Shown: piece after piece, positions 13,210 to 35,558 of the stretch
Layout of the letters: the number at the start of each line of letters is the position of its first letter
Position numbering within the stretch: position 1 is the first letter of the stretch
The notes under the pieces: generated by a model
Databases searched by the model: none
What the model was told of the DNA's origin: nothing
Seen by the model: only the letters and a program-made list of their open reading frames with translations
Assembly (NCBI GenBank): GCA_951804945.1
Contig: OX638158.1
Span: forward strand, 7,068,001-7,132,000
Length of the DNA stretch: 64,000 nucleotides
Direction of reading: 5' to 3'
Origin: Podarcis cretensis
Taxonomy: Eukaryota
Translations under genes and position numbers: made by a program

Positions 13210-14258
13210 CAGTGGTACCTCGGGTTAAGTACTTAATTTGTTCCGGAGGTCCGTTCTTAACCTGAAACTGTTCTTAACCTGAAGCACCACTTTAGCTAAT
13301 GGGGCCTCCTGCTGCTGCCATGCCACCGGAGTACGATTTCTGTTCTCATCCTGAAGCAAAGTTCTTAACCCGAGGTACTATTTCTGGGTTAGCGGACTGA
13401 CCAGTCTGTAACCTGAAGCGTATGTGTCAGAGCTGCCTCTAGGTCCCAGCTCACAGAGGACCAACGCTAGGCTGTCATAATGTACAAAAGTCTTTATTGA
13501 AGTTCAATTTCCATTTCAAAGCCGCAGCGCGCAGCCCTACGTCTTAAACCCTAGATCGGCGAAGTCCCGTCTGAGTCTCCTCCCCTCTGACACCAGTTTA
13601 AGATCCTAGCCCTGCTCCACCTTTTCCGCTGCTCTCTTCTCCTCTGGGTCCTCCTGCCCGCTGGGGCATTCCCCTTTCTGGACTCCTCTGACGCTGAGTC
13701 GCTTAGCTCCTCCCCCTGCCTCCGGCGGGCTTTAGGACCCGGTTCCCAATCCTCATTCTCTGCTGTCCCACGCTCCTGTACATTTGAACTTGCCTCTCGC
13801 GCCAACCCAGTGACCTTCCTCCTGACCGTTACACTACTTCTGTCACTGCTTCCCTCTTCCGGGATACTGGCCGGATCTGACCTCCCCTCCGTTGTCTGAC
13901 TCTCCGATGGAGGCGTGGTCAGCCCTGACTCCTCTCCTCTCCCTGCTGGGGGAGACGCTACTCCCGATACCTGTGACTCTTCCCCCCCACTATGCCCTGG
14001 TGGGGAAGCTGGTCCTGATTTCCAACTGCTGCTCTGGGAGTCCCTGCTGGCCCCTTGCTTCTGGGGTGTCCCCCTTGGGACCCCCCTTGCCCTGGCCACC
14101 GGCGCCCCCTTCTGTGAATCTTCCGATTCGCTGGAGAGGCTCATGGAATCCCTCGGTCCACTGTCCTCTTCTCCTACGCTCCCCTCGGATTCTTCCCCTT
14201 CGCTCTCCATCTCCTCTCTTCCCTGTGCCTCTGCTCCTGAGCCCCTGAGGTACCACTG
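13210..14258. mobile_element. MITE family A interrupted by a solo LTR
   Basis: MITE body 13210-13424; terminal ggtaccactg at 14249-14258. Confidence 0.85.
13425..14248 (-). mobile_element. Solo LTR (~820 bp) of a more distant Gypsy family, nested in a MITE
   Basis: Begins tgtcag and ends cccctga (terminal CA and TSD apparently lost by a cctga microhomology deletion). Splits a MITE. AATAAA on minus near 13493-13498. Carries a long acidic/Ser/Arg ORF. Confidence 0.75.
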
Positions 14259-15311
14259 TAATGCCAATTGGCTCTCTGCTATTTGTTAGAACCAACACTG
14301 GAGCTGGCCAGAAAAGGGTTTGATCTCATTCCATAAAACAGGAAGTTACCAATCTGTAGCAGACTTAGAAAAACGGTTAATTCTGGCCTCCTTGTTATGT
14401 GTCCAGGAAACTGTAACCTTCCTTGTAACTGTGCATTACCACAGGCAAAATCTGAACCACGCTGGTATAAGTAATGTCTGTGGCTTCAATATGGCCATTA
14501 CTGAGATGGCTGAGTTAGCTAGTTGTACTGGTCAGTCCAGAAAGCTCCAAGGGGGCCTATGGATGGAACATCACATTTGACATTACACATACCTTTTTCA
14601 AGAACCAAGAGCAACACTTGTGTGACCTTAGAGATAAGTCTCCTAATCTGCTCAGAATCTTGGCCACGTGCAGGTGCCTTTGCTCCAGCATGCGATGTTA
14701 GGATTTTCATCCAAATGACTCCACAAGGAACATCAATATGTGTTTAAATTGACTGTAAGAAATCGTTATCCTTTTTCACTGCCACTGGAGCACACAGAAT
14801 AAATTTAATCTGCTATTGCAGGGCCACAGATTGTATCTGGAGTGTACAGCAAAAACTCTCCCAACAAGTGTAAGCAATTTGCAATTGAATGCATAGCTTA
14901 GATTTACAGTACATGCCTCATCCAAGCAGGGGTGCTTCTTTTGCCAATCAGTGCATTCCTATAACATGTTATTAACCTACAAGGTGACATCCTATTCAAC
15001 AGGACCTAATATTTGTCCCAAAACAGCTTTGAGGAGCTGTTTCAAGATCCACACTTTATCCTGGCAACCCCTGTGTAAAGAAGACTCATTCTGAAGATCA
15101 TTCTACAGAGATTTAGTTAAAATGCTGACAGACTTATGTGGATAAAACTATGCTAAGGATTTTCACCTCCTTGAATCAGAAGATATGACTGCAAAGGCAG
15201 CTTGGAGTAATTCATCCAGGATGCACTTTATCAAAGATGGCAAGAAAGAAGGTTCAATTGATATACCTGATTTTCTATTTCCAAAGTGAAACCCACACAT
15301 TAACTACTACA

Positions 15312-24612: not shown

Positions 24613-27508
24613 TTTTTTTTTTTTAATAATATTTATTAAATTTTTGTATAACCAATAAAAAACATACATATTAACATAATATTTTCCATTATCCACATTT
24701 CATTCTCAACTTTGGACTTCCTCACATCTCTTGTTCCTGCTTTCTAAACATAAATTTTACCAGCAAATTATTAACTTAGTTTAATTCGTATAATATAATT
24801 TTCCAATATTTAATGTCTCAAATTCTGGGATTTAACATACTCTTATTGAAGCTTAATCATAAAATATTACTTATCCAAAATTTAGCTTTTCATCTTCCAA
24901 TTAAATTTAAATTTATATTCTTTATAACTAGTTTGTTGGAGCCGTGTTTTTGCTAATCTTACATCTTTCTTAACATTCATGCAATTTACAATATTTTTGT
25001 AGATAGTCCTTAAATTTCTTCCAGTCCTCCTCCACCAGTTCTTCTCCCAGGTCTCGGATTCTGCCAGTCATCTCCGCCAGTTCCATATAGTCTATCAGTT
25101 GCATCTGCCATTCTTCCAGTGTGGGTAATTCTTGAGTTTTCCAGCTTTTAGCGATGAGTATCCTTGCTGCTGTTGTAGCGTACATAAAAAAGGTTCGATC
25201 CTTCTTTTGCACACTCTGACCAACAATGCCCAAGAGAAAGGCCTATGGTTTCTTAAGGAAGGTATACTCAAATACCTTTTTCAGTTCATTATAAATCATT
25301 TCCCAGAAAACCTTCACTCTAGGGCAAGTCCACCAGAGGTGAAAGAATGTTCCTTCAGCTTCTTTACACTTCCAATATTTATTATCAGACACATGGTATA
25401 TCTTTGCAAGCTTGACTGGAGTCATGTACCACCTGTATATCATTTTCATAATGTTCTCTTTCAAGGCATTACATGCCGTAAATCTCAAACCTGTGGTCCA
25501 TAACTTTTCCCAGTCAGCAAACATGATGTTATACCCTATATCCTGTGCCCATTTTATCATGGCTGATTTGACCGTTTCATCCTGTGTATTCCATTTTAAC
25601 AGCAAGTTATACATTCTTGAAAGTATCTTAGAGCTGGGTTCTAACAATTCTGTTTCTAACTTTGATTTTTCCACCTGGAATCCTATCTTTTTATCCAACT
25701 TAAAAACTTCTTTAATCTGAGCATAATGTAGCCAGTCTCGCACTTTATCTTTTATTTTCTCCATACTCTGCAACCTCCAGTTATCTCCATCTTTTTCTAT
25801 TATTTCCCAATATTTCGGCCATTTGGCCTCCATATTAAGTTTTTTCAGGGCCTTAGCCTCCATTGGTGATAACCACCTTGGGGTCTTGTTTTCCAATAAG
25901 TCTTTATATTTCAACCAGACATTAAATATTGCTTTTCTGACAACATGGTTCTTAAAATTCTTATGTATTTTAGCCTTGTCATACCACAGATATGCATGCC
26001 ACCCAAATGCATTGTTGAATCCTTCCAAATCTAAAACATCAGTGTTCTCAAGAAGTAGCCAGTCTTTCAACCAGCAGAAAGCTGCTGATTCATAATACAA
26101 CTTTAGGTCTGGCAAGGCAAATCCCCCTCTTTCTTTAGCATCAGTTAATATCTTAAACTTAATTCTGGGCTTTTTGCCCTGCCAGACAAATCTTGAAATA
26201 TCTCTCTGCCACCTCCCAAAACACTCCATTTTGTCCACAATCTGCAAAGTTTGAAACAAAAATAACATTTTTGGCAATACATTCATCTTAATAGCAGCAA
26301 TACGTCCTGTCAAGGAAAATTTCAGTCTTGACCAAACATCTAAGGTAAAGGTAAAGGTACCCCTGCCCGTACGGGCCAGTCTTGACAGACTCTGGGGTTG
26401 TGCGCCCATCTCACTCAAGAGGCCGGGGGCCAGCGCTGTCCGGAGACACTTCCGGGTCACGTGGCCAGCGTGACATCGCTGCTCTGGCGAGCCAGAGTCG
26501 CACACGGAAACGCCGTTTACCTTCCCGCTGGTAAGCGGTCCCTATTTATCTACTTGAACCCGGGGTGCTTTCGAACTGCTAGGTTGGCAGGCGCTGGGAC
26601 CGAGCAGCGGGAGCGCACCCCGCCGCGGGGATTCGAACCGCCGACCTTTCGATCGGCAAGCCCTAGGCGCTGAGGCTTTTACCCACAGCGCCACCCGCGT
26701 CCCGACCAAACATCTAGATCCCTTTTAATTTCAGACCAACATTTTTCATAATTATCTTTAAATAAATTCCTGTTCTTCGCTGTTATATTTACCCCTAGGT
26801 ATCTCACTTTTTTAACCACATTTAATTCTGTCTCTTTCTGAAACCTTTCTGATTCTGAAGAAGTCAAATTTTTTCTAAAACCTTGGTTTTTTGCTTATTA
26901 AGTTTAAATCCCACCACTCGACCAAACTCATAAATCAGTTGTAATACCCTTTTAGTACTAGGCTCTGGCTCCTGTAGGGTCAAAACTAGGTCATCTGCAA
27001 ATGCTTTCAGTTTATATTGTTTCGCTCCGACCTGGATACCTTCCACCAACCGGTCTCCTCTGATCATATTCAAGAGCACTTCTAGGACCGATATAAATAA
27101 CAAAGGGGATATAGGGCAACCTTGTCGTGTTCCTTTTTCAATTCTAAACTCTTCTGTCACCACATTGTTGACTATCAATTTTGCCTTTTGCTCTGAATAA
27201 ATTGCCTCTATCCCATTGTAAAACCCCCGCCCCACTCCCATTCCTTCCAAATTTTTCTTCATAAACTTCCAGGAGATATTATCAAAGGCCTTCTCCGCGT
27301 CTATAAATATCAAGACTGCTTTTGTATTAATGTTTGTTTGCAAGAGTTCCAAAATATCAATAATGTTCCTTGTGTTTGCAAACAAATGTCTACCTGGGAG
27401 AAAGCCTGCCTGGTCCTTATGAATTACTTCATTTAAGACTTTTTTAAATCTACTTGCTAAAATGTCTGCAAATATTTTGTAATCCACATTTAGGAGGGAG
27501 ATGGGGCG
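24613..27508 (-). mobile_element. 5'-truncated L1-clade LINE (ORF2 RT to C-terminus, 3'UTR, polyA)
   Basis: RPISLLNVDYKI, DAEKAFD, GTRQGCPISP, FADD, GGFALPDL and a C-terminal Cys/His motif. AATAAA + polyA at 24613-24640. 18-bp TSD AATATTCTTCCCTTTATC at 24595-24612 and 27509-27526. Frameshifts near 26870 and 25245. Confidence 0.95.
26343..26703 (-). mobile_element. Sauria SINE nested in the L1
   Basis: GGGACGCGGGTGGCGCTGTGGG head, B-box GGTTCGAATCC, (ACCTTT)n tail. 13-bp TSD GACCAAACATCTA at 26330-26342 and 26704-26716. Confidence 0.93.
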
Positions 27509-28374
27509 AATATTCTTCCCTTTATCCAACTAATTTTTAGTTACCAAATAGTTCCTGGTTCACCACAGGGGCATCTTTCTTTCTCACAGCCCAGAAGAAT
27601 TTGTCTCAAGTATTTCAGGTAACAACTCACAATACTATATTCTGTATAAGCCACATTGACCAACAACATCCTTTATAGTCCATTGCCAAATTGTTGTTTT
27701 CGTTGTTAATCTATACTCCGCCTTTTTCCCTGACAGGGGCTCAAGACAACTTACAGATAAAAATAAGAACCACTAAAAACATAGAAAAACTGATCATTAA
27801 AAAAACAACTAAACATTGGCCAAATTCAGCATTGTTCAGGTACTCTTAGGAAGCCTTAAGAACACTTCACTTCTACATCATGCAACTAATCCTGCATCAA
27901 CTCGGATTCAGGTTAGGGAGGGAATTTTAAGAAATACTAATCCTATAAACAGGGAACAAAGCAGCAGTTGGAAATGATACTTACACAATATTTCTGAATA
28001 AAAAGCCATTGATCCATCTATCCTCGTCCTCACACAGCCAGGCTCAGCTCTTACTTTCGTCAATTAAATGTGTGTTGAGGTTACGTTTACTATTCCTTAA
28101 ACCTTGGGATTCAACATGAAACATGGTATATACATAAAATATAAAAACAGAAAAACAACTGCTGCATGAAACAGAGGTTGACCGAGAAGCAGAGAGTTTC
28201 ACCTTGATAGGCCTCTGAAAATCAAAGCTATTCCATCTGAATTGGGAGGGCTTATATTAGGACATTTGAAATATATGAAGCTGTCTTGTACTGAGACCAC
28301 TAAGTCCACCTATTCCAGTGCTCAACTGGTAGCAATTCTCCGAAGTCTCCTGCAGGTTTTTCCTATAAACTGCT

Positions 28375-28784
28375 TGTGGTGGGATAATGAGCTGCTTGTG
28401 CGTTAAAGCTTGATCCCTCAGAGCTCACTCAGTGTAGTGAAGCCCTGCCTTGAGCGGAGCCCTTCGGGGTGGCTCCGTCAGTCGCTGGTAGAATCTGACA
28501 GTGGGCGTTTGCGGAAACGTTTCCAACATAAAAGCTGTTTCACGGACATGCGCCTCCTGGATTCCCTGCGTGACAGTTTCCGGCGAGGGGTGGGGGTCCT
28601 TAAAGGATGTCCTGATACCTCCTCACTGTTCTCACTGGAAGTATCCCAGAGCCTCCCCTCCGACTCCCTTTCCTTTGGAGCTCCCGCACTCCCCCTACTG
28701 GTTCCCTCTTCTGCTGAAGAAGTGTCTCTCCTATTCTCCTGGAGCCTTCTCACCACCTGTCCTTCCGATGGCAGTTCCCTGACA
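28375..28784 (-). repeat. 3' LTR of the Gypsy element
   Basis: Direct repeat of 33475-33884; preceded in element sense by purine tract GGGGGGGAGGTGGA. Confidence 0.96.
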
Positions 28785-31700
28785 TCCACCTCCCCCCCAG
28801 GGCCCCCTTCACCCCCTCCCGCCTCTTCTCTTACTGGCGGCGAGGACGGAAATCCCTGGAAGGAACTCCCCTCATCCTCCGAGGATTCAAACACTTCTAA
28901 CCACGGCCTTCCGTCTCTTTCCCCATCTTCCTCTCCTTCGTCGGAATCTGTTTCCACCTCCACCCCCGACTCTGGGAACCCTTCAAACTCCCCTTCCTCA
29001 TCTGTAGTACCGAAGTGTTCCCTCCTAAATCTTGCCACTGGTTGTGGTTTTCTTGGGAAACGCCGATGAAACGTTTCTATTAAAATCTCGTCTTTGACTT
29101 CCTCTGCCGGTACCCATGTGTTTTCTGACTCTTCCTCCCCCTCCCATTCTACCAAGTATTCCACCTGATTTCCCTTCCACCTGGAATCAATGATCCCTGC
29201 CACATCCATGTTGCGTTCTCTCTCTTCTATGACGGGTGTCCGGGTGACCTCCCTCTCATGTTCCCCCCACTCACGTCCCTCTCTGTACGGCGACAATAAT
29301 GACCTGTGAAATACTGGGTGCAATTTCATGTGACTGGGCAATCGGAGTTTGAATGCTACTGGGTTGACCTGCTGTATGACCTCAAAGGGTCCCAACCGTT
29401 TGGGTCTCAATTTCTTACACCCTCCCTTGAACGGCAGTCCTTGGGTGGATAGCCACACCCGGTTACCCACCCTTATGGTTTCGCCTTCCCTCCTATTTCT
29501 GTCTGCTTGCTTCTTATATTCTTCTTTGGCTTTCTCTAAGTTGAGTTGGAGCTGACGGTGGATCGCTTCCATCTCTTCAACAAAATTTTCCGCTGCAGGT
29601 ACACTCCACCTCCCCCCTCCTTCTCCTGGAAACGCCCGAGGATGACACCCATAATTGGCTAGAAAGGGACTCATCCCTGTGGACACGTTCTCCGCGTTGT
29701 TGTAGGCAAATTCTGCCAGAGGTAACCTGTCTACCCAATCAGTTTCTCTGTCCTTTACATAACACCTCAGATATTGTTGCAAAACCCCGTTTGCCCTTTC
29801 TGCTTGCCCATTTGTTTCTGGGTGCCTGGCGGTGGAAAAACTTACCTCCACATGCAACATGCTCATTAGTTTCCTCCAGAACCTGGAAGTAAATTGTTTT
29901 CCTCTGTCGCTCAAAACCCTCAAGGGGGCGCCATGCAACCTAAAAATGTGCTTCACAAACAACCTTGCGGTTTCTTCCGCTGTCACTGCATGTGAACAAG
30001 CTATAAAGTGGCACATCTTAGTTAGTAGATCTACCACCACCATGACCGCGGTTTTCCCTTTGGATCTCGGTAGATCGGTCATGAAGTCTATGGATACCAT
30101 CTCCCATGGCCTTTCTGGGGTGGGTAAGGGTTCTAATAACCCTGCTGGCGCCAACCTCTCTCCCTTTGCTCTTTGGCACCTGTCGCATCCCCTGACATAC
30201 TCCCGCACGTCTTCCCGTACCTTGGGCCACCAAAACTCCCTGGTAACCAACCACATGGTCTTGTGCTGCCCGAAGTGCCCCGCCGTGGGGCTGTCATGCA
30301 ACTGTTTGAGCACCCGCCCTCTTAGTTCCCCATCTGGTATGTAGAGTGCCCCTTTGTAATATAGTTTTCCGTTCTTTTCCTCAAAACCCCCTGCGTTCTC
30401 ACCTGTCTCCCTCAGTTCCCTAAGTTTTTCTTGGGCATATTCATCGTTCTCAATACCCTCTACCAGTTCTCTTTGCCCCACCAATGCCGCCCCACAAACC
30501 CAGTGGTCCTCCGAGATGATATGTCTTTCTTCCGCCCCTCCTTCCCCCTCCAAGTACTCAGGTTTTCTGGAGAGAGCGTCCGCCCTGACATTCTCAGCCC
30601 CTGGCACGTAGCGAATTTCAAAATTGAACTTGGAGAACTCTTGCGCCCATCTTACTTGTCTCTGGTTCAATACTCGGGCTGTCCTCCAGTATTCTAGATT
30701 TTTGTGGTCTGTCCGCACTTGAACCTTGTGTTGCGCCCCAATCAACAGGTGTCTCCATCTCTTGAACGCTTCGTGGACGGCGAGTAATTCTCTGTCGTAC
30801 ACTGTATAATTCCTCTCAGATTTGTTCAATTTCCTCGAGAAGAAGGCACACGGTCTCCATTCTGACGTATTCGGTCCTGGCTGCAGGAGCACGGCGCCCA
30901 CCGCTCTGTCAGACGCGTCGGTTTCCACCCTCATCGGCTGCTGCAGATCCACGTGTAAGAGTTGTTCTTCCGAAGCAAACGCCCTCTTTAAACTTTCGAA
31001 AGCTCGCTGCGCTTCTTCCGTCCAGACAAATTTCTTCTTACTGCTGAGACAATCCGTGATGGGGGCTGTTAAGTGGGCGAAGTTCTTGATGAACTTCCGA
31101 TAGAAGTTTCCGAACCCCAAAAACCTCTGCACATCTTTCTTAGTTTTCGGTGGCCTCCATTCCAGCACCGCTTGCACCTTGCTAGGATCCATGGCCAGCC
31201 CCTTGTCCGACAACCGGTATCCTAGGAATTCCACCTCCCTGGTGTGAAACTGACACTTCTCCAGTTTCACCCACAGCTGGTTTTCTTGCAGTTTCCTCAG
31301 TACCTCTTGTACATCTCGCACATGCTGCTCTTCATCCTCTGAGTACACCAGTACATCATCCAAGAACGCAGCGCAGTTCTTGTACAGCAATGGTCCTAGT
31401 ACGTGATTCATGAATGATTGAAATACTGCCGATCCCGCCTGGAGGCCGAAAGGCATAACGCAGTACTCAAATGCTCCCAAGGGGGTGAACATAGTGGTTT
31501 TCCACTCATCTCCCTTTCTCATACGTATCAGGTTATACGCCCCCCTCAGGTCCAGCTTGGTAAAAATCTTCCCTTTTCTCACCCGGGTCAGAATGTCATC
31601 GATTCTGGGCATAGGGAAAGTCACGGGTTCGGACACTGCGTTTAGGGCCCGGAAGTCCACAATTAATCTCGGTTTGTCCGAATTTTTTTTGTCCACAAAG

Positions 31701-32476
31701 AACACTGGGCTACCCCCCACCGCTCGTGACTCTCTGATGAACCCACGCTTGAGGTTTTTGTCAATAAACTCCCTTAGCTCCTGCATCTCCCTGTCAGACA
31801 TTGCATACACCTTGCCCACTGGCAATTGTGCTCCTGGGAGTAAGTTGATTTGGCAGTCAAAGGGTCTGTGCGGGGGTAGTTTATCTGCTTCCCTTTCGCT
31901 GAAGACGTCGGCAAAATCTGCATATTGTCGTGGTACCCTACCTTGATCCGTTGCTTCTATCTTTGCTAACGTGGCCTGAGTGCCTACTTGGCCCCCTTTT
32001 TCTGTGCAGTGTCCCATACAATGTGCTGACCCAAAGGAAACCACTCTCTGATGCCATCCCACAAGCGGATCATGCAGCGCTAGCCAGCTCATCCCCAAAA
32101 TGATGGGCGCTCCTCCCAAAGTGGCTATATTAAACGCTATCAGTTCCGTGTGTCTTGCCACCCTCATTGTCATGGGGACAGTCTGCTGGTTTACTTCTCC
32201 CCCCAACAGCGCCCTCCCATCAATCGTGGTCACCTGCAGGGGATTTTTTAAAGGGATGGTCTGTATCTGATGTGCGGCTGCAAACTCCTTACTCATAAAG
32301 TTGCAGGAGCTGCCTGAGTCTAATAGCGCCTTCACCTTTAGTGGGTGTCCGTTTGCCAGCTCCAGCAATACCTCTATTACAAGAGCTGGTCTTGGGGGTT
32401 CTGGCGTGGGCACATTTACTGTTCCTTGGCCTGGCTGCTGTGCCCCGTCGGTGGCAGCCAGGCGTTGGCTTTTACT
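28478..32476 (-). CDS. pol: Pol: protease-RT-RNase H-integrase-chromodomain plus acidic/LTR-encoded tail, reached by -1 frameshift
   Basis: ALLDSG protease, FLDD RT, VETDAS RNase H, HHCC + DDE integrase, GPF motif, chromodomain (~29046-29209). The frame is -1 relative to gag and open from a TAA at 32485-32483; the GTG at 32413 is only the ORF-finder start. Confidence 0.95.
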   Translation of the reverse strand, partial: SKSQRLAATDGAQQPGQGTVNVPTPEPPRPALVIEVLLELANGHPLKVKALLDSGSSCNFMSKEFAAAHQIQTIPLKNPLQVTTIDGRALLGGEVNQQTVPMTMRVARHTELIAFNIATLGGAPIILGMSWLALHDPLVGWHQRVVSFGSAHCMGHCTEKGGQVGTQATLAKIEATDQGRVPRQYADFADVFSEREADKLPPHRPFDCQINLLPGAQLPVGKVYAMSDREMQELREFIDKNLKRGFIRESRAVGGSPVFFVDKKNSDKPRLIVDFRALNAVSEPVTFPMPRIDDILTRVRKGKIFTKLDLRGAYNLIRMRKGDEWKTTMFTPLGAFEYCVMPFGLQAGSAVFQSFMNHVLGPLLYKNCAAFLDDVLVYSEDEEQHVRDVQEVLRKLQENQLWVKLEKCQFHTREVEFLGYRLSDKGLAMDPSKVQAVLEWRPPKTKKDVQRFLGFGNFYRKFIKNFAHLTAPITDCLSSKKKFVWTEEAQRAFESLKRAFASEEQLLHVDLQQPMRVETDASDRAVGAVLLQPGPNTSEWRPCAFFSRKLNKSERNYTVYDRELLAVHEAFKRWRHLLIGAQHKVQVRTDHKNLEYWRTARVLNQRQVRWAQEFSKFNFEIRYVPGAENVRADALSRKPEYLEGEGGAEERHIISEDHWVCGAALVGQRELVEGIENDEYAQEKLRELRETGENAGGFEEKNGKLYYKGALYIPDGELRGRVLKQLHDSPTAGHFGQHKTMWLVTREFWWPKVREDVREYVRGCDRCQRAKGERLAPAGLLEPLPTPERPWEMVSIDFMTDLPRSKGKTAVMVVVDLLTKMCHFIACSHAVTAEETARLFVKHIFRLHGAPLRVLSDRGKQFTSRFWRKLMSMLHVEVSFSTARHPETNGQAERANGVLQQYLRCYVKDRETDWVDRLPLAEFAYNNAENVSTGMSPFLANYGCHPRAFPGEGGGRWSVPAAENFVEEMEAIHRQLQLNLEKAKEEYKKQADRNRREGETIRVGNRVWLSTQGLPFKGGCKKLRPKRLGPFEVIQQVNPVAFKLRLPSHMKLHPVFHRSLLSPYREGREWGEHEREVTRTPVIEERERNMDVAGIIDSRWKGNQVEYLVEWEGEEESENTWVPAEEVKDEILIETFHRRFPRKPQPVARFRREHFGTTDEEGEFEGFPESGVEVETDSDEGEEDGERDGRPWLEVFESSEDEGSSFQGFPSSPPVREEAGGGEGGPGGEVDVRELPSEGQVVRRLQENRRDTSSAEEGTSRGSAGAPKERESEGRLWDTSSENSEEVSGHPLRTPTPRRKLSRRESRRRMSVKQLLCWKRFRKRPLSDSTSD
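32408..32476 (-). promoter_or_regulatory. -1 ribosomal frameshift signal with H-type pseudoknot
   Basis: Stem 1 GCCTGGCTGC/GCAGCCAGGC (32463-32454 / 32438-32429); stem 2 GGGCACA/TGTGCCC (32445-32439 / 32414-32408); 6-nt spacer after A_GTA_AAA. Confidence 0.8.
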
Positions 32477-33429
32477 TGCTCCTTAGCTCCTTCTCCCTCC
32501 TCCCCAACAGCTCCCGCCATTCCTTGCCATTCCTTTCTTTGCGGACAAACTCTGGCAAAATGACCTGGCTGTTGGCAGAGAAAACATTTCTTGGCGCCTT
32601 TTCCCTCCTTCTTCCGCCCTTCACTGGGGTTTGAAATTGCGCGCGCGCGCGCTGTTCCGATTTCCATCGGCTCTGCTGGCAGAGAAGGCTGCTCTGGAAT
32701 CTCTGGAATGCGGAAATCCCTCCAACGCTCCCCTTTCCCTTCCCGCTTCTCCAAGGCTCTGGCCTCCTGGCGTGATCCTATGGCCAGCGCTGATTTGGTC
32801 AGATGGTCCATAGACTCCGCCCTGGGCCCCCGGGAAAGTTCGTCTTTCACTGCCGAAGATAGTCCTTCTTCGAACAGCATTTGTATCGGTTCCGCTGACA
32901 AATCCCAACCTAATTTATGGATCAACATGGTGAACTCAGTCCAGTACTCACGGACAGATCGGTTCCCTTGTTTACACGCCATTAACTGCCTGCGCGCCAC
33001 TCCCTGCTCAATCTCGCTGGAAAACATCAGATCCATGGCGCGAAAAAACTTCCTTGTGTCCCTTAGGGCTTCATTATTGGCTGCCATTAGTGGCCTCACC
33101 CAATCTTTTGCCCCGCCTTCGAGATGCCCAATCACATAAGCAACCCTCGAATCCTCATCAGGAAAATCATCAAACTGCAGATTGAGGGCATATTGCATCT
33201 CTGTCCTGAAGGCTTGATAATTCCTGGGATCACCCCCAAACTTCTGCACCAGTCCAGGCACTTTCCTCGAGAGCTGGGCGGCTTTCCCCTTTTCTGCATC
33301 ATGAGCCCTCCTCTCCTCAAGCCTCGCCGTTTGCAGAGCTAACTGTACCTCCAACATCCTGTACCTTTCTTCCAGGCTAGGACCGGCTGCAGCTGCTCCC
33401 CCATCTCCGGCTCCGGCTGGGTTGCTCAT
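32416..33429 (-). CDS. gag: Gag (sushi/PEG10-like capsid + CCHC zinc knuckle), 337 aa
   Basis: Capsid motifs (KFGGD, QGNRSVREY, LFEEGLSSAVKDEL), EPMEIG motif and CFLCQQPGHFARVC knuckle. Confidence 0.95.
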   Translation of the reverse strand: MSNPAGAGDGGAAAAGPSLEERYRMLEVQLALQTARLEERRAHDAEKGKAAQLSRKVPGLVQKFGGDPRNYQAFRTEMQYALNLQFDDFPDEDSRVAYVIGHLEGGAKDWVRPLMAANNEALRDTRKFFRAMDLMFSSEIEQGVARRQLMACKQGNRSVREYWTEFTMLIHKLGWDLSAEPIQMLFEEGLSSAVKDELSRGPRAESMDHLTKSALAIGSRQEARALEKREGKGERWRDFRIPEIPEQPSLPAEPMEIGTARARAISNPSEGRKKEGKGAKKCFLCQQPGHFARVCPQRKEWQGMAGAVGEEGEGAKEQVKANAWLPPTGHSSQAKEQ

Positions 33430-33461
33430 GATGCCTCTCTTTGCACAAGCTGCTTTCAGGG

Positions 33462-33472
33462 ACTGTCAGATT
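33462..33472 (-). promoter_or_regulatory. Self-priming primer binding site (Tf1-type)
   Basis: AATCTGACAGT, 2 nt after the 5' LTR, is perfectly complementary to ACTGTCAGATT at 33602-33592 within the LTR. No TGG tRNA-type PBS. Confidence 0.85.
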
Positions 33473-33474
33473 GC

Positions 33475-33884
33475 TGTGGTGGGATAATGAGCTGCTTGTG
33501 CGTTAAAGCTTGATCCCTCAGAGCTCACTCAGTGTAGTGAAGCCCTGCCTTGAGCGGAGCCCTTCGGGGTGGCTCCGTCAGTCGCTGGTAGAATCTGACA
33601 GTGGGTGTTTGCGGAAACGTTTCCAACATAAAAGCTGTTTCACGGACATGCGCCTCCTGGATTCCCTGCGTGACAGTTTCCGGCGAGGGGTGGGGGTCCT
33701 TAAAGGATGTCCTGATACCTCCTCACTGTTCTCACTGGAAGTATCCCAGAGCCTCCCCTCCGACTCCCTTTCCTTTGGAGCTCCCGCACTCCCCCTACTG
33801 GTTCCCTCTTCTGCTGAAGAAGTGTCTCTCCTATTCTCCTGAAGCCTTCTCACCACCTGTCCTTCCGATGGCAGTTCCCTGACA
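33475..33884 (-). repeat. 5' LTR of the Gypsy element
   Basis: Direct repeat of 28375-28784; starts TGTCAG in element sense. Confidence 0.96.
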
Positions 33885-35109
33885 CTGCTGCTACTTCATC
33901 CTTTTTAATTAGAGAAGATTCCAGGCATTGAACCTGGGGACTTTGACATGCAGAGCATCTACTCTATCACTGAGTTACAGCCCTTCCTCATAGATCATGT
34001 ACCTTATGAACTTTCTCCAGGTGTCCAAAGCTAGGACATCAGGCAAATACAGGACACTCTTGGAAAATACAATCGTGATCCCCAAAGCAAAAGTCCACAA
34101 ATGAACTAATAGACCAACTATTTCTGAATTCAAGGTGCAGGACAAAAGAAGATGGAGAATCATTCTCTGTATACTGGAGCTTCAGAAGTTAATGAAAAAC
34201 ATTTTAGGAAGGGTCAAATTTTATTTTTAATCTTTCTCTAAAGGGAACTTGTATTCCTTAGATTCAAGAACGTCACACAATTCTTTAAAGGTCACTGTCT
34301 ATTTTAACTTTTTACAAAGAATAAAGTCACCCGATCTAAAGAAGCAGCCATTGTTTTAAGTATCACTGTTAGTTTGCTAAAGCAATAGGGGGGAAAAGCA
34401 AAGAAGCAAGTGTGTTCTTTTAAGAAATGAAATGAAAAATATCAAAGAGGCAAGGGCTGAAAGTTTGAAAGTCTCACTTTAAAGAGCCTAATAGCCTCAG
34501 GAGTATTATTTTGTTCTCAGCCGAGTCAAGCTTTTCTTCAGCAACATCCTTCAACCGCAGCAGCTGCCAATCACCATCCGCCAGCTATCCTCCAAATTAA
34601 ATGGAAGAACAATGTTAATGAGACCACTGCAATCAGAATTTCAAGGACATCGATGCAGCACACTTGAGGCCACATGGAAGGCAACAGGGAGGACAAACCC
34701 TTCAATTTTGGAGGAAACTGCAATGCCAGGGATTTTCGCGGCCTCTGGAAAAGGTTTGTGCTGATATTAAACCAACAGACCCTCATGGCATTAATCACAT
34801 TAACTGCACTGTTTTCAAGCTTAACACAGTCTGGGCATAAAATATTTCTAAACTCTTGGAATGCTGCAAAACCGTGCATTAGAATTTATACTAACATGTG
34901 CTTATGAGCAATAGTGGCTAGAGCCCCCACTCATTTTCAAAATTAGTGATGCCCAACTGCACCCACTCCCAGATCTTCCCACCAAGCAACTCACTCCCAT
35001 GTCACCCTTGTCTCCCGCTATCACCCTTCCCATATGTATCAAACATATTTTGTGGCCATATGTCCCGTGTGCATCAAACCTTTCATATCTGCAAAAAAAT
35101 TACTGAAGA

Positions 35110-35558
35110 TGTCAGTTGCTGTTGTGGTTGCTCGAGAGTAACCAGGCAGGACTCCGACCTGTCTTTTACAGGCTTTATTTTGGTGCAAACTATTTACAGT
35201 GCGGAGCGTCATAAGTTCATGTCTGGCTCAATTGCTAGCAGAATCCAGGAGTGGTCTGTTCTTGTACCTCCTCCAACATAAAAGTTACGTCACCCCCAGC
35301 CTTTTCCGCCCCTCCCTGCGCCTCTAGCTACTGCGCATGATGGGCAAAGTCAGGGGTGTGCTTCCCTCCTCTCTAGTTTGCTCAGGCGCGGTGTTAAGGC
35401 TCTTTCTAGCATCCTCTCATTCTTGCACCTCTTCTCCACTGGAGATGGGGGTTTCCTCCTCGCTGGAAGAGGAACTGCTTTGCAAGATTTTCAGAGGCTC
35501 CCTGTAACACAATTCCCCCTCTATCTCTCACCTCTGAGCCGATGGCAGTTCCCTGACA
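35110..35558 (-). mobile_element. Solo LTR related to the Gypsy element
   Basis: TGTCAG...CTGACA termini and GAAGA TSD (35105-35109, 35559-35563). Terminal 20 bp (ccgatggcagttccctgaca) and ccaacataaaag are shared with the full-length LTR. AATAAA on minus near 35174-35179. Confidence 0.9.

What the first reader, a model, noticed from the sequence alone, without database searches (positions are those of the whole stretch)
28850..29032. Retrotransposon integrase tail carries tandem LEDGF-binding-like (IBM/TIM) FxGF motifs: a candidate host-mimicry integration-targeting system
Seen: directly after the chromodomain, Pol reads RFRREHFGTTDEEGEFEGF (29032-28976) and WLEVFESSEDEGSSFQGF (28903-28850). 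Each has a Phe, then an acidic Ser/Thr linker with CK2-type sites, then FxGF. Established: this helix-F / acidic linker / FxGF layout is the IBD-binding or TND-interacting motif by which MLL1, JPO2/CDCA7L, POGZ and IWS1 bind LEDGF/p75, HRP2 and other TFIIS-N-terminal-domain proteins, with affinity raised by CK2 phosphorylation. From memory, MLL1 reads RRFRAVFG...EDEQFLGF, very like motif 1. HIV integrase uses the same LEDGF domain, via its catalytic core, to target transcribed genes. Inference: this lizard chromovirus may tether its intasome to elongation-associated chromatin by mimicking a host motif. This copy does sit in a gene body. I know of no description of such motifs in an LTR-retrotransposon integrase.
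Basis: partly seen in the sequence, partly recalled or inferred. Interest (0 to 1): 0.92.

Follow-up and report, generated by a model that had tools for sequence, protein, structure and literature searches.

The report
Host-like FxGF motifs on retrotransposon integrase
A young lizard LTR retrotransposon carries, on the floppy tail of its integrase, two conserved copies of the short peptide pattern that host proteins use to dock onto the chromatin readers LEDGF/HRP2, so it may choose its insertion sites by mimicking a host motif; binding itself is untested.

Summary
Pol (32413-28481, minus strand) of a 5,510-bp Ty3/gypsy chromovirus reads RFRREHFGTTDEEGEFEGF (29032-28976) and WLEVFESSEDEGSSFQGF (28903-28850), just after the chromodomain. 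AlphaFold2 gives this tail pLDDT below 50.

The motifs are not chance:
- Shuffling the tail gives two or more FxGF in 0.4% of trials, and 0.01% with the right context.
- None of 245 other gypsy/chromovirus proteins has such a unit after the integrase SH3 domain.
- Every tail-bearing relative keeps at least one unit: three Podarcis lineages at 52-82% integrase identity, and an Anolis family that has no chromodomain.
- Key F/W/G positions are 79% conserved; the rest of the tail is 32%.

All lineages with the unit have a broken or missing chromodomain aromatic cage. The cage-intact Anolis sister family has no unit.

The layout fits the published TIM/IBM definition: hydrophobic helix anchors, an 8-16-residue acidic Ser/Thr linker, then FxGF. 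The strict D/ExExFxGF consensus is met only in relatives, not in this copy.

Binding to LEDGF/HRP2, phosphorylation and insertion bias were not testable, and the gene-body claim is unverified. First readers noted the same motif on other copies in this genome. I found no paper describing it. I read it as a plausible new variant of integrase-tail tethering.

The parts
28375..33884 (-). Complete Ty3/gypsy chromovirus, 5,510 bp, flanked by the 5-bp target-site duplication AGCAG (28370-28374 and 33885-33889)
   Evidence: Direct repeat; base-by-base LTR comparison and TSD
33475..33884 (-). 5' LTR, 410 bp, TG...CA
   Evidence: differs from the 3' LTR at 2 of 410 positions
28375..28784 (-). 3' LTR, 410 bp; its first ~101 codons are read by Pol
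   Evidence: mismatches at 28506 and 28742; Pol stop at 28478-28480
32416..33429 (-). Gag ORF, 337 aa (Retrotrans_gag, CCHC zinc knuckle)
28478..32413 (-). Pol ORF, 1311 aa: PR, RT, RNase H, integrase (H2C2, rve, SH3), chromodomain, then a 193-aa tail
29060..29203 (-). Chromodomain (aa 1071-1118). Only the middle residue of the three-residue aromatic cage is kept (M-W-E at the HP1 Y24/W45/Y48 positions)
   Evidence: Pfam PF00385 E=8.7e-10; cage columns; cage definition from PMC3350952
28976..29032 (-). Unit 1 (aa 1128-1146): F1129/F1134 anchors, linker GTTDEEGE with CK2-type sites T1136/T1137, then F1143-E-G1145-F1146
   Evidence: G1145 is invariant and F1129, F1134 and F1146 are each 91% conserved over 11 relatives
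28904..28975 (-). Variable acidic spacer between the units (aa 1147-1170). Its length and sequence are not conserved
   Evidence: most columns 0-36% identical
28850..28903 (-). Unit 2 (aa 1171-1188): W1171/V1174/F1175 anchors, linker ESSEDEGSS with CK2-type sites S1177/S1178, then F1185-Q-G1187-F1188
   Evidence: W1171 is invariant in the alignment. The unit is kept in families A and B
28785..28815 (-). Polypurine tract, read in frame by Pol (GGEGGPGGEVD)
28481..28784 (-). LTR-encoded end of the Pol tail: a Ser/acidic stretch, then an Arg-rich stretch and a short predicted helix (LLCWKRF)
   Evidence: helix at model residues 317-326. The same ending is kept in P0001, P0003, P0007 and, diverged, in P0004

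Best explanation
The integrase of this lizard chromovirus ends in an intrinsically disordered tail that carries two short linear motifs. Each motif has a pair of hydrophobic anchor residues, an 8-9-residue acidic Ser/Thr-rich linker with casein-kinase-2-type sites, and an FxGF turn. This is the architecture of the TND-interacting / IBD-binding motifs by which host transcription factors dock onto the TFIIS-N-terminal-type domain (the 'integrase-binding domain') of the H3K36me readers LEDGF/PSIP1 and HRP2/HDGFL2. The most likely mechanism is that the tail mimics these host motifs, possibly with phosphorylation raising affinity. That would tether the intasome to LEDGF/HRP2-marked, transcribed chromatin. 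In this clade the mimicry would have taken over the targeting role of the chromodomain, whose methyl-lysine cage is broken or which is lost altogether. Shown here: the motifs exist, lie in a predicted disordered region, are under protein-level constraint across diverged lineages, and co-occur with cage loss. Inferred: the binding partner, the phospho-regulation and the effect on insertion sites.
For: (1) The coordinates and layout are exact, and the linkers hold CK2-pattern sites. (2) The tail is predicted disordered: pLDDT is below 50 from about aa 1131 onward, while the SH3 and chromodomain score 70-90. (3) The layout fits the published definition: a helix with F/V/L/I anchors, an acidic 8-16-residue linker rich in E/D/G/S/T that CK2 phosphorylates, and FxGF, which is essential for the LEDGF and HRP2 TNDs. 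Several host proteins carry two or three such motifs, and LEDGF dimerises (PMC9987994). MLL1 uses helix residues F129/F133 plus F148-L-G-F151, with the consensus D/ExExFxGF (PMC8022399). Fly JIL-1 uses DFxGFDE to bind the LEDGF homologue JASPer, so this interaction mode is conserved across animals (PMC6877644). (4) Conservation: family A (window, P0001-3, P0007, P0160) keeps both units. Family B (P0004, 60% IN identity) keeps unit 2. Family C (P0009, P0154, P0155, P0161, P0162, P0166; about 50% identity) keeps FDDWLF-TPTLSAST-F[QH]GF aligned to unit 1. Anolis family D (P0239/P0240), which has no chromodomain, has LRDIF-A[EA]PSDE[DE]S-FEGF. Key positions are 79% identical against 32% for the rest of the tail, permutation p<1e-5. 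The strict consensus is met in P0160, P0007 and P0240. (5) Specificity: 0 units in 245 control proteins. The nearest tail-less relatives end a median of 15 aa after the chromodomain. (6) Phylogeny: A+B+C form a starred clade. A+B+C+D(+Gekko) as one clade is not rejected (p-AU 0.64). (7) Cage pattern: 181 of 237 controls have all three cage aromatics. Families A and B have x-W-E, C has N-R/K-T (P0162: N-K-F), and D has no chromodomain. The Anolis sister family E has a full cage and no FxGF.
Against: No binding evidence of any kind was obtained. A host TND/IBD sequence could not be brought in by reference, so no complex was modelled. Neither unit of this copy meets the strict D/E-x-E-x-F-x-G-F consensus (Gly1141 and Ser1183 at -2). 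In three family-A relatives the first Phe of unit 1 is Leu or Met. Family C has a Ser/Thr-rich linker rather than an acidic one. A profile of the two units finds no solved LEDGF-ligand chain at E<=10, and Pfam and the protein atlas give nothing. AlphaFold2 predicts only a three-residue helix before unit 1 and none before unit 2. The conserved lineages amount to about four, of which three share an ancestor, so the statistics overstate independence. All relatives with a named source come from two lizard genera. Insertion preference was not tested.
Confidence: 0.5

Rival explanations
1. The units are functional short linear motifs, but their partner is not LEDGF/HRP2. Candidates are another TND (TFIIS, Elongin A, IWS1, PPP1R10, MED26), or a reader of acidic-aromatic peptides such as Mediator, TFIIH or CBP, the targets of acidic activation domains. 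Tethering or another host interaction would still follow, but with a different chromatin target.
For: The helix and acidic linker are shared by all TIMs, and TND selectivity is subtle. The tail is rich in D/E plus W/F, as acidic activation domains are. The strict LEDGF consensus is missed in this copy.
Against: According to the review, FxGF is optional for other TNDs but present in all known LEDGF/HRP2 ligands and essential there. The Gly of unit 1's FxGF is invariant and its last Phe nearly so across families. That points to a shaped pocket rather than the loose composition that activation domains need.
Confidence: 0.25
2. The acidic, Phe-bearing segment acts within the element's own proteins. 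It could fold back on the Arg-rich C-terminal stretch, on the integrase DNA-binding surfaces or on the cage-less chromodomain, acting as an autoinhibitory or DNA-mimicking tail with no host partner.
For: The tail has an acidic half followed by an Arg-rich half. The units lie directly next to a chromodomain that has lost its usual ligand cage.
Against: AlphaFold2 docks the tail on nothing; pLDDT stays below 50 throughout. Anolis family D keeps the unit without any chromodomain. The spacer between the units varies freely in length and sequence, as expected for independent linear motifs.
Confidence: 0.1
3. The resemblance is chance in a low-complexity Glu/Gly/Phe-rich tail, or the conservation reflects nucleotide-level constraints near the polypurine tract and LTR rather than selection on the peptide.
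For: The coding strand is purine-rich, and the tail has 8 Phe and 16 Gly in 92 aa. A single FxGF arises in 10% of shuffles. An antisense ORF (28410-29069) overlaps the region.
Against: Two units in context arise in 0.01% of shuffles, and controls show none. The motif residues persist in tails that are otherwise unalignable, including families C and D. The units end 65 nt or more upstream of the LTR. The antisense ORF is what a purine-rich sense strand produces.
Confidence: 0.05

Closest known systems
Host TND-interacting / IBD-binding motifs (MLL1/KMT2A, JPO2/CDCA7L, POGZ, IWS1, ASK/DBF4, MED1; fly JIL-1)
   Same: A disordered segment with hydrophobic helix anchors, an 8-16-residue acidic Ser/Thr linker bearing CK2-type sites, and FxGF. 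Motifs often come in twos or threes.
   Different: Here the motif sits on a transposable-element integrase, not a host transcription factor. The strict D/ExExFxGF consensus is missed by one position in this copy. Binding is untested.
HIV-1 / lentiviral integrase binding to the LEDGF/p75 IBD
   Same: The same host domain is proposed as the tether, with the expected outcome of integration into transcribed gene bodies. The HIV integrase site on the IBD overlaps the FxGF (IBM2) site.
   Different: Lentiviral integrase binds through its folded catalytic core, not a linear motif. Here a disordered C-terminal peptide would copy the host ligands themselves.
Murine leukaemia virus integrase C-terminal tail binding the BET-protein ET domain
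   Same: A short peptide in the integrase C-terminal region engages a host chromatin reader and sets integration-site preference (PMC4027182, listed).
   Different: The host domain (ET, not TND/IBD), the motif and the chromatin target (promoters and enhancers) all differ.
Yeast Ty1 integrase targeting domain-AC40 and Ty5 integrase targeting domain-Sir4
   Same: Small C-terminal integrase segments of LTR retrotransposons that bind one host protein and direct integration (Ty1: PMC7459421). That Ty5's six-residue domain needs phosphorylation is from my own knowledge.
   Different: Unrelated motifs and partners (Pol III subunit; heterochromatin protein). Neither copies a known host ligand motif.
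Chromovirus chromodomain targeting (MAGGY chromodomain-H3K9me2/3)
   Same: The same element class and the same position at the integrase C-terminus. This is the ancestral targeting device of the class (PMC3350952).
   Different: In this clade the aromatic cage is incomplete or the domain is absent. The conserved feature is the linear motif after it.

Membership tests
TND-interacting motif / IBD-binding motif, LEDGF-HRP2 class | FxGF motif | tested here: met
   FEGF at aa 1143-1146 and FQGF at aa 1185-1188. Kept in relatives, with L/M replacing the first F of unit 1 in P0001-3.
TND-interacting motif / IBD-binding motif, LEDGF-HRP2 class | Flexible acidic linker of 8-16 residues rich in E/D/G/S/T before FxGF | tested here: met
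   GTTDEEGE (8 residues) and ESSEDEGSS (9 residues); definition. Family C has a Ser/Thr-rich, non-acidic linker.
TND-interacting motif / IBD-binding motif, LEDGF-HRP2 class | Short alpha-helix with conserved F/V/L/I anchors upstream of the linker | tested here: inconclusive
   F1129/F1134 and W1171/V1174/F1175 are conserved. AlphaFold2 shows only a 3-residue helix at about aa 1127-1129 and none before unit 2, at low confidence. The review describes TIMs as disordered sequences, so a free-state model cannot settle this.
TND-interacting motif / IBD-binding motif, LEDGF-HRP2 class | Published consensus D/E-x-E-x-F-x-G-F | tested here: not met
   In the window, unit 1 has Gly and unit 2 has Ser at -2. 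The consensus is met strictly in relatives P0160 and P0007 (unit 1) and Anolis P0240. Allowing D/S/T at -2, it is met by window unit 2, P0003, P0004 and P0239.
TND-interacting motif / IBD-binding motif, LEDGF-HRP2 class | Lies in an intrinsically disordered region | tested here: met
   pLDDT is below 50 across the tail, while the neighbouring SH3 and chromodomain fold confidently.
TND-interacting motif / IBD-binding motif, LEDGF-HRP2 class | CK2 phosphorylation of the linker raises affinity | not testable with these tools
   Only the S/T-x-x-D/E pattern is seen, at T1136, T1137, S1177 and S1178.
TND-interacting motif / IBD-binding motif, LEDGF-HRP2 class | Direct binding to a TND/IBD five-helix bundle | not testable with these tools
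   No host TND sequence was available by reference. Sequence searches of solved structures found nothing.
Chromovirus (Ty3/gypsy with integrase chromodomain) | LTRs, gag, pol in the order PR-RT-RH-IN, chromodomain at the integrase C-terminus | tested here: met
Chromovirus group I ('classical') chromodomain | Three-residue aromatic cage (HP1 Y24, W45, Y48) | tested here: not met
   The window has M-W-E, and families A-C lack one to three cage residues. 181 of 237 control elements have all three; definition.

The most novel reading that the evidence does not exclude
A clade of lepidosaur Ty3/gypsy elements replaced chromodomain reading of histone methylation with molecular mimicry of host TND-interacting motifs. 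Its integrase tail binds the IBD of LEDGF/HRP2, perhaps switched on by CK2 phosphorylation, and steers integration into H3K36-methylated transcribed chromatin. That would be a second, independent and mechanistically different capture of the same host tether that lentiviruses use.
Probability: 0.4. Interest if true: 0.85.

Novelty: new variant of a known kind. Interest (0 to 1): 0.72.

Why it matters
Integrase-tail tethering to host chromatin proteins is the main known way that retroviruses and LTR retrotransposons choose insertion sites. The TIM/IBM-TND code, separately, organises the host transcription-elongation machinery. If this tail binds LEDGF/HRP2, it would be the first LTR-retrotransposon integrase found to copy that host code. 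It would also show that the LEDGF tether was captured twice, by different interfaces. It offers a natural experiment as well: sister families with an intact chromodomain cage and no motif, against families with the motif and a broken or missing chromodomain. That comparison bears on how targeting mechanisms are swapped in evolution. Finally, the short motif could be tested as a portable peptide tag for LEDGF/HRP2 binding.

Tried and rejected
- Sequence search of the 91-aa tail against all PDB chains found nothing at E<=10. A profile of the two units also found nothing. One early attempt failed on a frame error.
- Pfam on the tail halves at E<=10 gave nothing.
- The protein-atlas feature search of the tail gave only sub-threshold unnamed clusters.
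- The primary IBM/TIM papers (Tesina 2015, Sharma 2018, Cermakova 2021) are not held. The motif definition therefore comes from two reviews and the JASPer paper.
As a result there is no DNA of relatives, no codon-level selection test, and no species for P0004 or P0007.
No expression or copy-variation data were obtained.
- Complex prediction was not run. Its references cover only bacteria, archaea and phages, and I did not type a host LEDGF sequence from memory.
- The gene-body claim could not be confirmed. Pfam on nine flanking ORFs found only another reverse transcriptase, and earlier scan notes name no host exon.
- DNA similarity between the two units is modest (z=3.1; 8 of 2000 shuffles reach it). 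An internal duplication is possible but not shown.
- The antisense ORF 28410-29069 was judged a by-product of the purine-rich sense strand.
- The consensus lines that the alignment tool prints by default were not used or carried forward.
Full report
**What is there.** The finding lies in a complete Ty3/gypsy chromovirus on the minus strand, at 28375-33884 (5,510 bp).
- The two 410-bp LTRs (28375-28784 and 33475-33884) begin TG and end CA. They differ at 2 positions and are flanked by the 5-bp duplication AGCAG.
- Gag (33429-32416, 337 aa) and Pol (32413-28481, 1311 aa) are both open.
- Pfam gives Pol the order protease, RT, RNase H, integrase zinc-binding and core domains, Tf2-type SH3, and chromodomain at aa 1071-1118.
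- After the chromodomain Pol continues for 193 residues. It reads through the polypurine tract and about 101 codons of the 3' LTR.

**The observation.** Residues 1128-1146 read RFRREHFGTTDEEGEFEGF (29032-28976). Residues 1171-1188 read WLEVFESSEDEGSSFQGF (28903-28850).
- Each unit has hydrophobic anchors (F1129/F1134; W1171/V1174/F1175).
- Each has an 8- or 9-residue linker made of D/E/S/T/G, with S/T-x-x-D/E sites at T1136, T1137, S1177 and S1178.
- Each ends in FxGF.
- The two units align to each other at 43% identity. Their DNA similarity is modest (z=3.1).

**Is it more than chance?**
- Composition-preserving shuffles of the 92-aa tail give one FxGF in 10% of trials and two in 0.41%. Two units with an acidic/Ser-Thr linker and an upstream hydrophobic residue arise in 0.011%.
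That set covers 32,488 residues, and 57 proteins have more than 110 aa after SH3.
- The only matches elsewhere (11 in 263,340 residues) are the structured FLGF/FVGF motifs of the RT/RNase H region.

**Relatives.** An exhaustive profile-free search with the integrase-to-end segment and three word-seeded searches show that the tail is confined to a small group. I labelled the lineages as follows.

| Family | Members | Integrase identity to window | What the tail keeps |
|---|---|---|---|
| A | window, Podarcis muralis P0001, P0002, P0003, P0160, unnamed P0007 | 64-82% | Both units |
| B | P0004 (source unnamed) | 60% | Unit 2 only (WKTVFESDENEDTDFLGF), plus the C-terminal LLCWKR ending |
| C | Podarcis P0009, P0154, P0155, P0161, P0162, P0166 | about 50% | FDDWLF-TPTLSAST-F[QH]GF, aligned with unit 1 |
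| D | Anolis carolinensis P0239/P0240 (clusters of 46 and 75 members) | 48% | No chromodomain, but LRDIF-A[EA]PSDE[DE]S-FEGF about 50 residues after the SH3 domain |
| E | Anolis P0163-P0165 | 48-49% | Chromodomain and a long tail, but no FxGF |

- In three family-A members the first Phe of unit 1 is Leu or Met.
- The next relatives (47% identity or less: frog, fish, fungi, many unnamed) end a median of 15 residues after the chromodomain.
- The Sphenodon and Gekko entries are truncated.

**Constraint.** In a 12-row alignment (A1), G1145 and W1171 are invariant and F1129, F1134 and F1146 nearly so.
- The eleven key positions are on average 79% identical to the window, against 32% for the other 69 tail positions. 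Permutation gives p<1e-5.
- The spacer between the units varies in both length and sequence.
- The rows represent only three lineages, so this p-value overstates independence.
- Families C and D have tails that are otherwise unalignable to family A, which makes a nucleotide-level explanation unlikely.

**Phylogeny.** In an integrase tree of 84 rows, A+B+C form a clade with SH-aLRT 99. They sit with D+Gekko, E and Sphenodon in a lepidosaur group with support 83-92. Holding A+B+C+D+Gekko together to the exclusion of E gives a slightly better likelihood and is not rejected (p-AU 0.64). One origin of the unit is therefore compatible with the data but not shown; two origins remain possible.

**Chromodomain cage.** I used the HP1 positions Y24/W45/Y48, which form the methyl-lysine cage (PMC3350952).
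- Of 237 control elements, 181 have all three aromatics.
- Families A and B have x-W-E (the window has M-W-E).
- Family C has N-R/K-T (P0162 has Phe at the third position).
- Family D has no chromodomain.
- Family E has F-W-F/Y.
- So every lineage with the FxGF unit has a defective or absent cage, and the cage-intact sister lineage lacks the unit. This rests on at most two evolutionary events, so it is suggestive only.

**Structure.** AlphaFold2 on SH3-chromodomain-tail, using the family alignment, folds the SH3 and chromodomain (block pLDDT 70-90). It leaves the tail from about aa 1131 at pLDDT below 50.
- It predicts a three-residue helix at about aa 1127-1129 and a short helix in the LTR-encoded LLCWKRF stretch.
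- Nothing docks back on the folded domains.
- This is the context expected for short linear motifs, and it is weak evidence against an intramolecular role.

**Comparison with what is known.**
- The review PMC9987994 defines TND-interacting motifs as an obligate short helix with F/V/L/I anchors, an acidic 8-16-residue linker enriched in E/D/G/S/T that CK2 phosphorylates, and an FxGF. FxGF is optional in general but present in all known LEDGF and HRP2 ligands and essential there.
- The same review notes that several proteins carry two or three motifs, and that LEDGF dimerises.
- PMC8022399 gives MLL1 as a helix with F129/F133 plus F148-L149-x-F151, and the consensus D/ExExFxGF. It also states that the HIV integrase site on the IBD overlaps the FxGF site.
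- PMC6877644 shows that fly JIL-1 uses DFxGFDE to bind the LEDGF homologue, so the interaction mode is old and widespread in animals.
- The window's units meet the FxGF, linker, disorder and CK2-pattern criteria.
- They miss the strict consensus at position -2 (Gly, Ser). Relatives P0160, P0007 and P0240 meet it.
- Sequence searches against solved structures, Pfam and the atlas give nothing, as expected for an 18-residue motif.

**Mechanism proposed.**
- Shown: conserved, disordered, tandem TIM-like units on an integrase tail, in a clade whose chromodomain has lost its cage.
- Inferred: the units bind the IBD/TND of LEDGF/HRP2. The linker Ser/Thr sites may raise affinity when phosphorylated. 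The multimeric intasome, with two units per integrase, would then be held on H3K36-methylated transcribed chromatin.
- Rivals: a different partner (another TND or an activation-domain target), an intramolecular regulatory tail, or chance.
- I put the LEDGF/HRP2 reading at 0.5.

**What could not be done.**
- No host TND sequence was available by reference, so no complex was modelled.
There is therefore no relatives' DNA, no codon-level test, no expression data and no species for P0004 or P0007.
- The claim that this copy lies in a gene body is unverified. The adjacent flank holds another reverse-transcriptase ORF.

**Literature and earlier scan notes.** Searches for FxGF/LEDGF, for retrotransposon integrase with LEDGF, for TND-interacting motifs with transposable elements, and for lizard chromoviruses found no description of such motifs on an LTR-retrotransposon integrase. 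First-stage readers of this scan noted the same motif on three other copies in this genome. Those are repeats of the same idea, not independent evidence.

**Verdict.** This is a real, conserved feature and a well-founded, testable hypothesis: a new variant of integrase-tail tethering that copies a host motif class. The partner is unproven.

Noticed in passing
window 28481-28784: Pol reads through the polypurine tract and about 101 codons of the 3' LTR. It ends in an Arg-rich stretch and a short predicted helix (LLCWKRF). The same ending is kept in P0001, P0003 and P0007 and, diverged, in family B (P0004), so the LTR-encoded part looks like real coding sequence. It might be a nuclear-localisation or chromatin/nucleic-acid-binding segment.
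   Followed up: partly
window 29060-29203: The chromodomain keeps only the middle aromatic cage residue (M-W-E). Related family C has lost all three in most members, and Anolis family D has lost the whole domain. 76% of other chromoviruses sampled keep the full cage.
   Followed up: yes
window 35231-35557: A weak translated match (38% over 109 aa, E=4e-6) to the LTR-encoded part of the Pol tail, about 1.3 kb beyond the 5' LTR. It is probably a fragment of a related LTR.
   Followed up: no
window 13551-14267: A 238-aa open frame on the minus strand with no Pfam match.
   Followed up: no
window 25243-27529: Just beside the 3' LTR lie a 221-aa ORF with a reverse-transcriptase domain (RVT_1, E=2.6e-35) and a 420-aa ORF without any Pfam match. 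This is probably another retroelement, so the chromovirus sits in a repeat-rich stretch.
   Followed up: partly
P0010 (Podarcis muralis XP_077774286.1): A gene model named vomeronasal type-2 receptor 26-like carries integrase and SH3 domains 80% identical to this family, together with receptor domains. This is probably a family copy annotated into a host gene model.
   Followed up: no
window 28410-29069 (+): A 219-aa antisense open frame overlaps the tail-coding region. It is most likely a by-product of the purine-rich sense strand.
   Followed up: partly
window 33440-33474: The sequence after the 5' LTR (GCAATCTGACAGTCCC...) includes TGACA, the reverse complement of the LTR's first bases TGTCA. 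I did not examine this.
   Followed up: no
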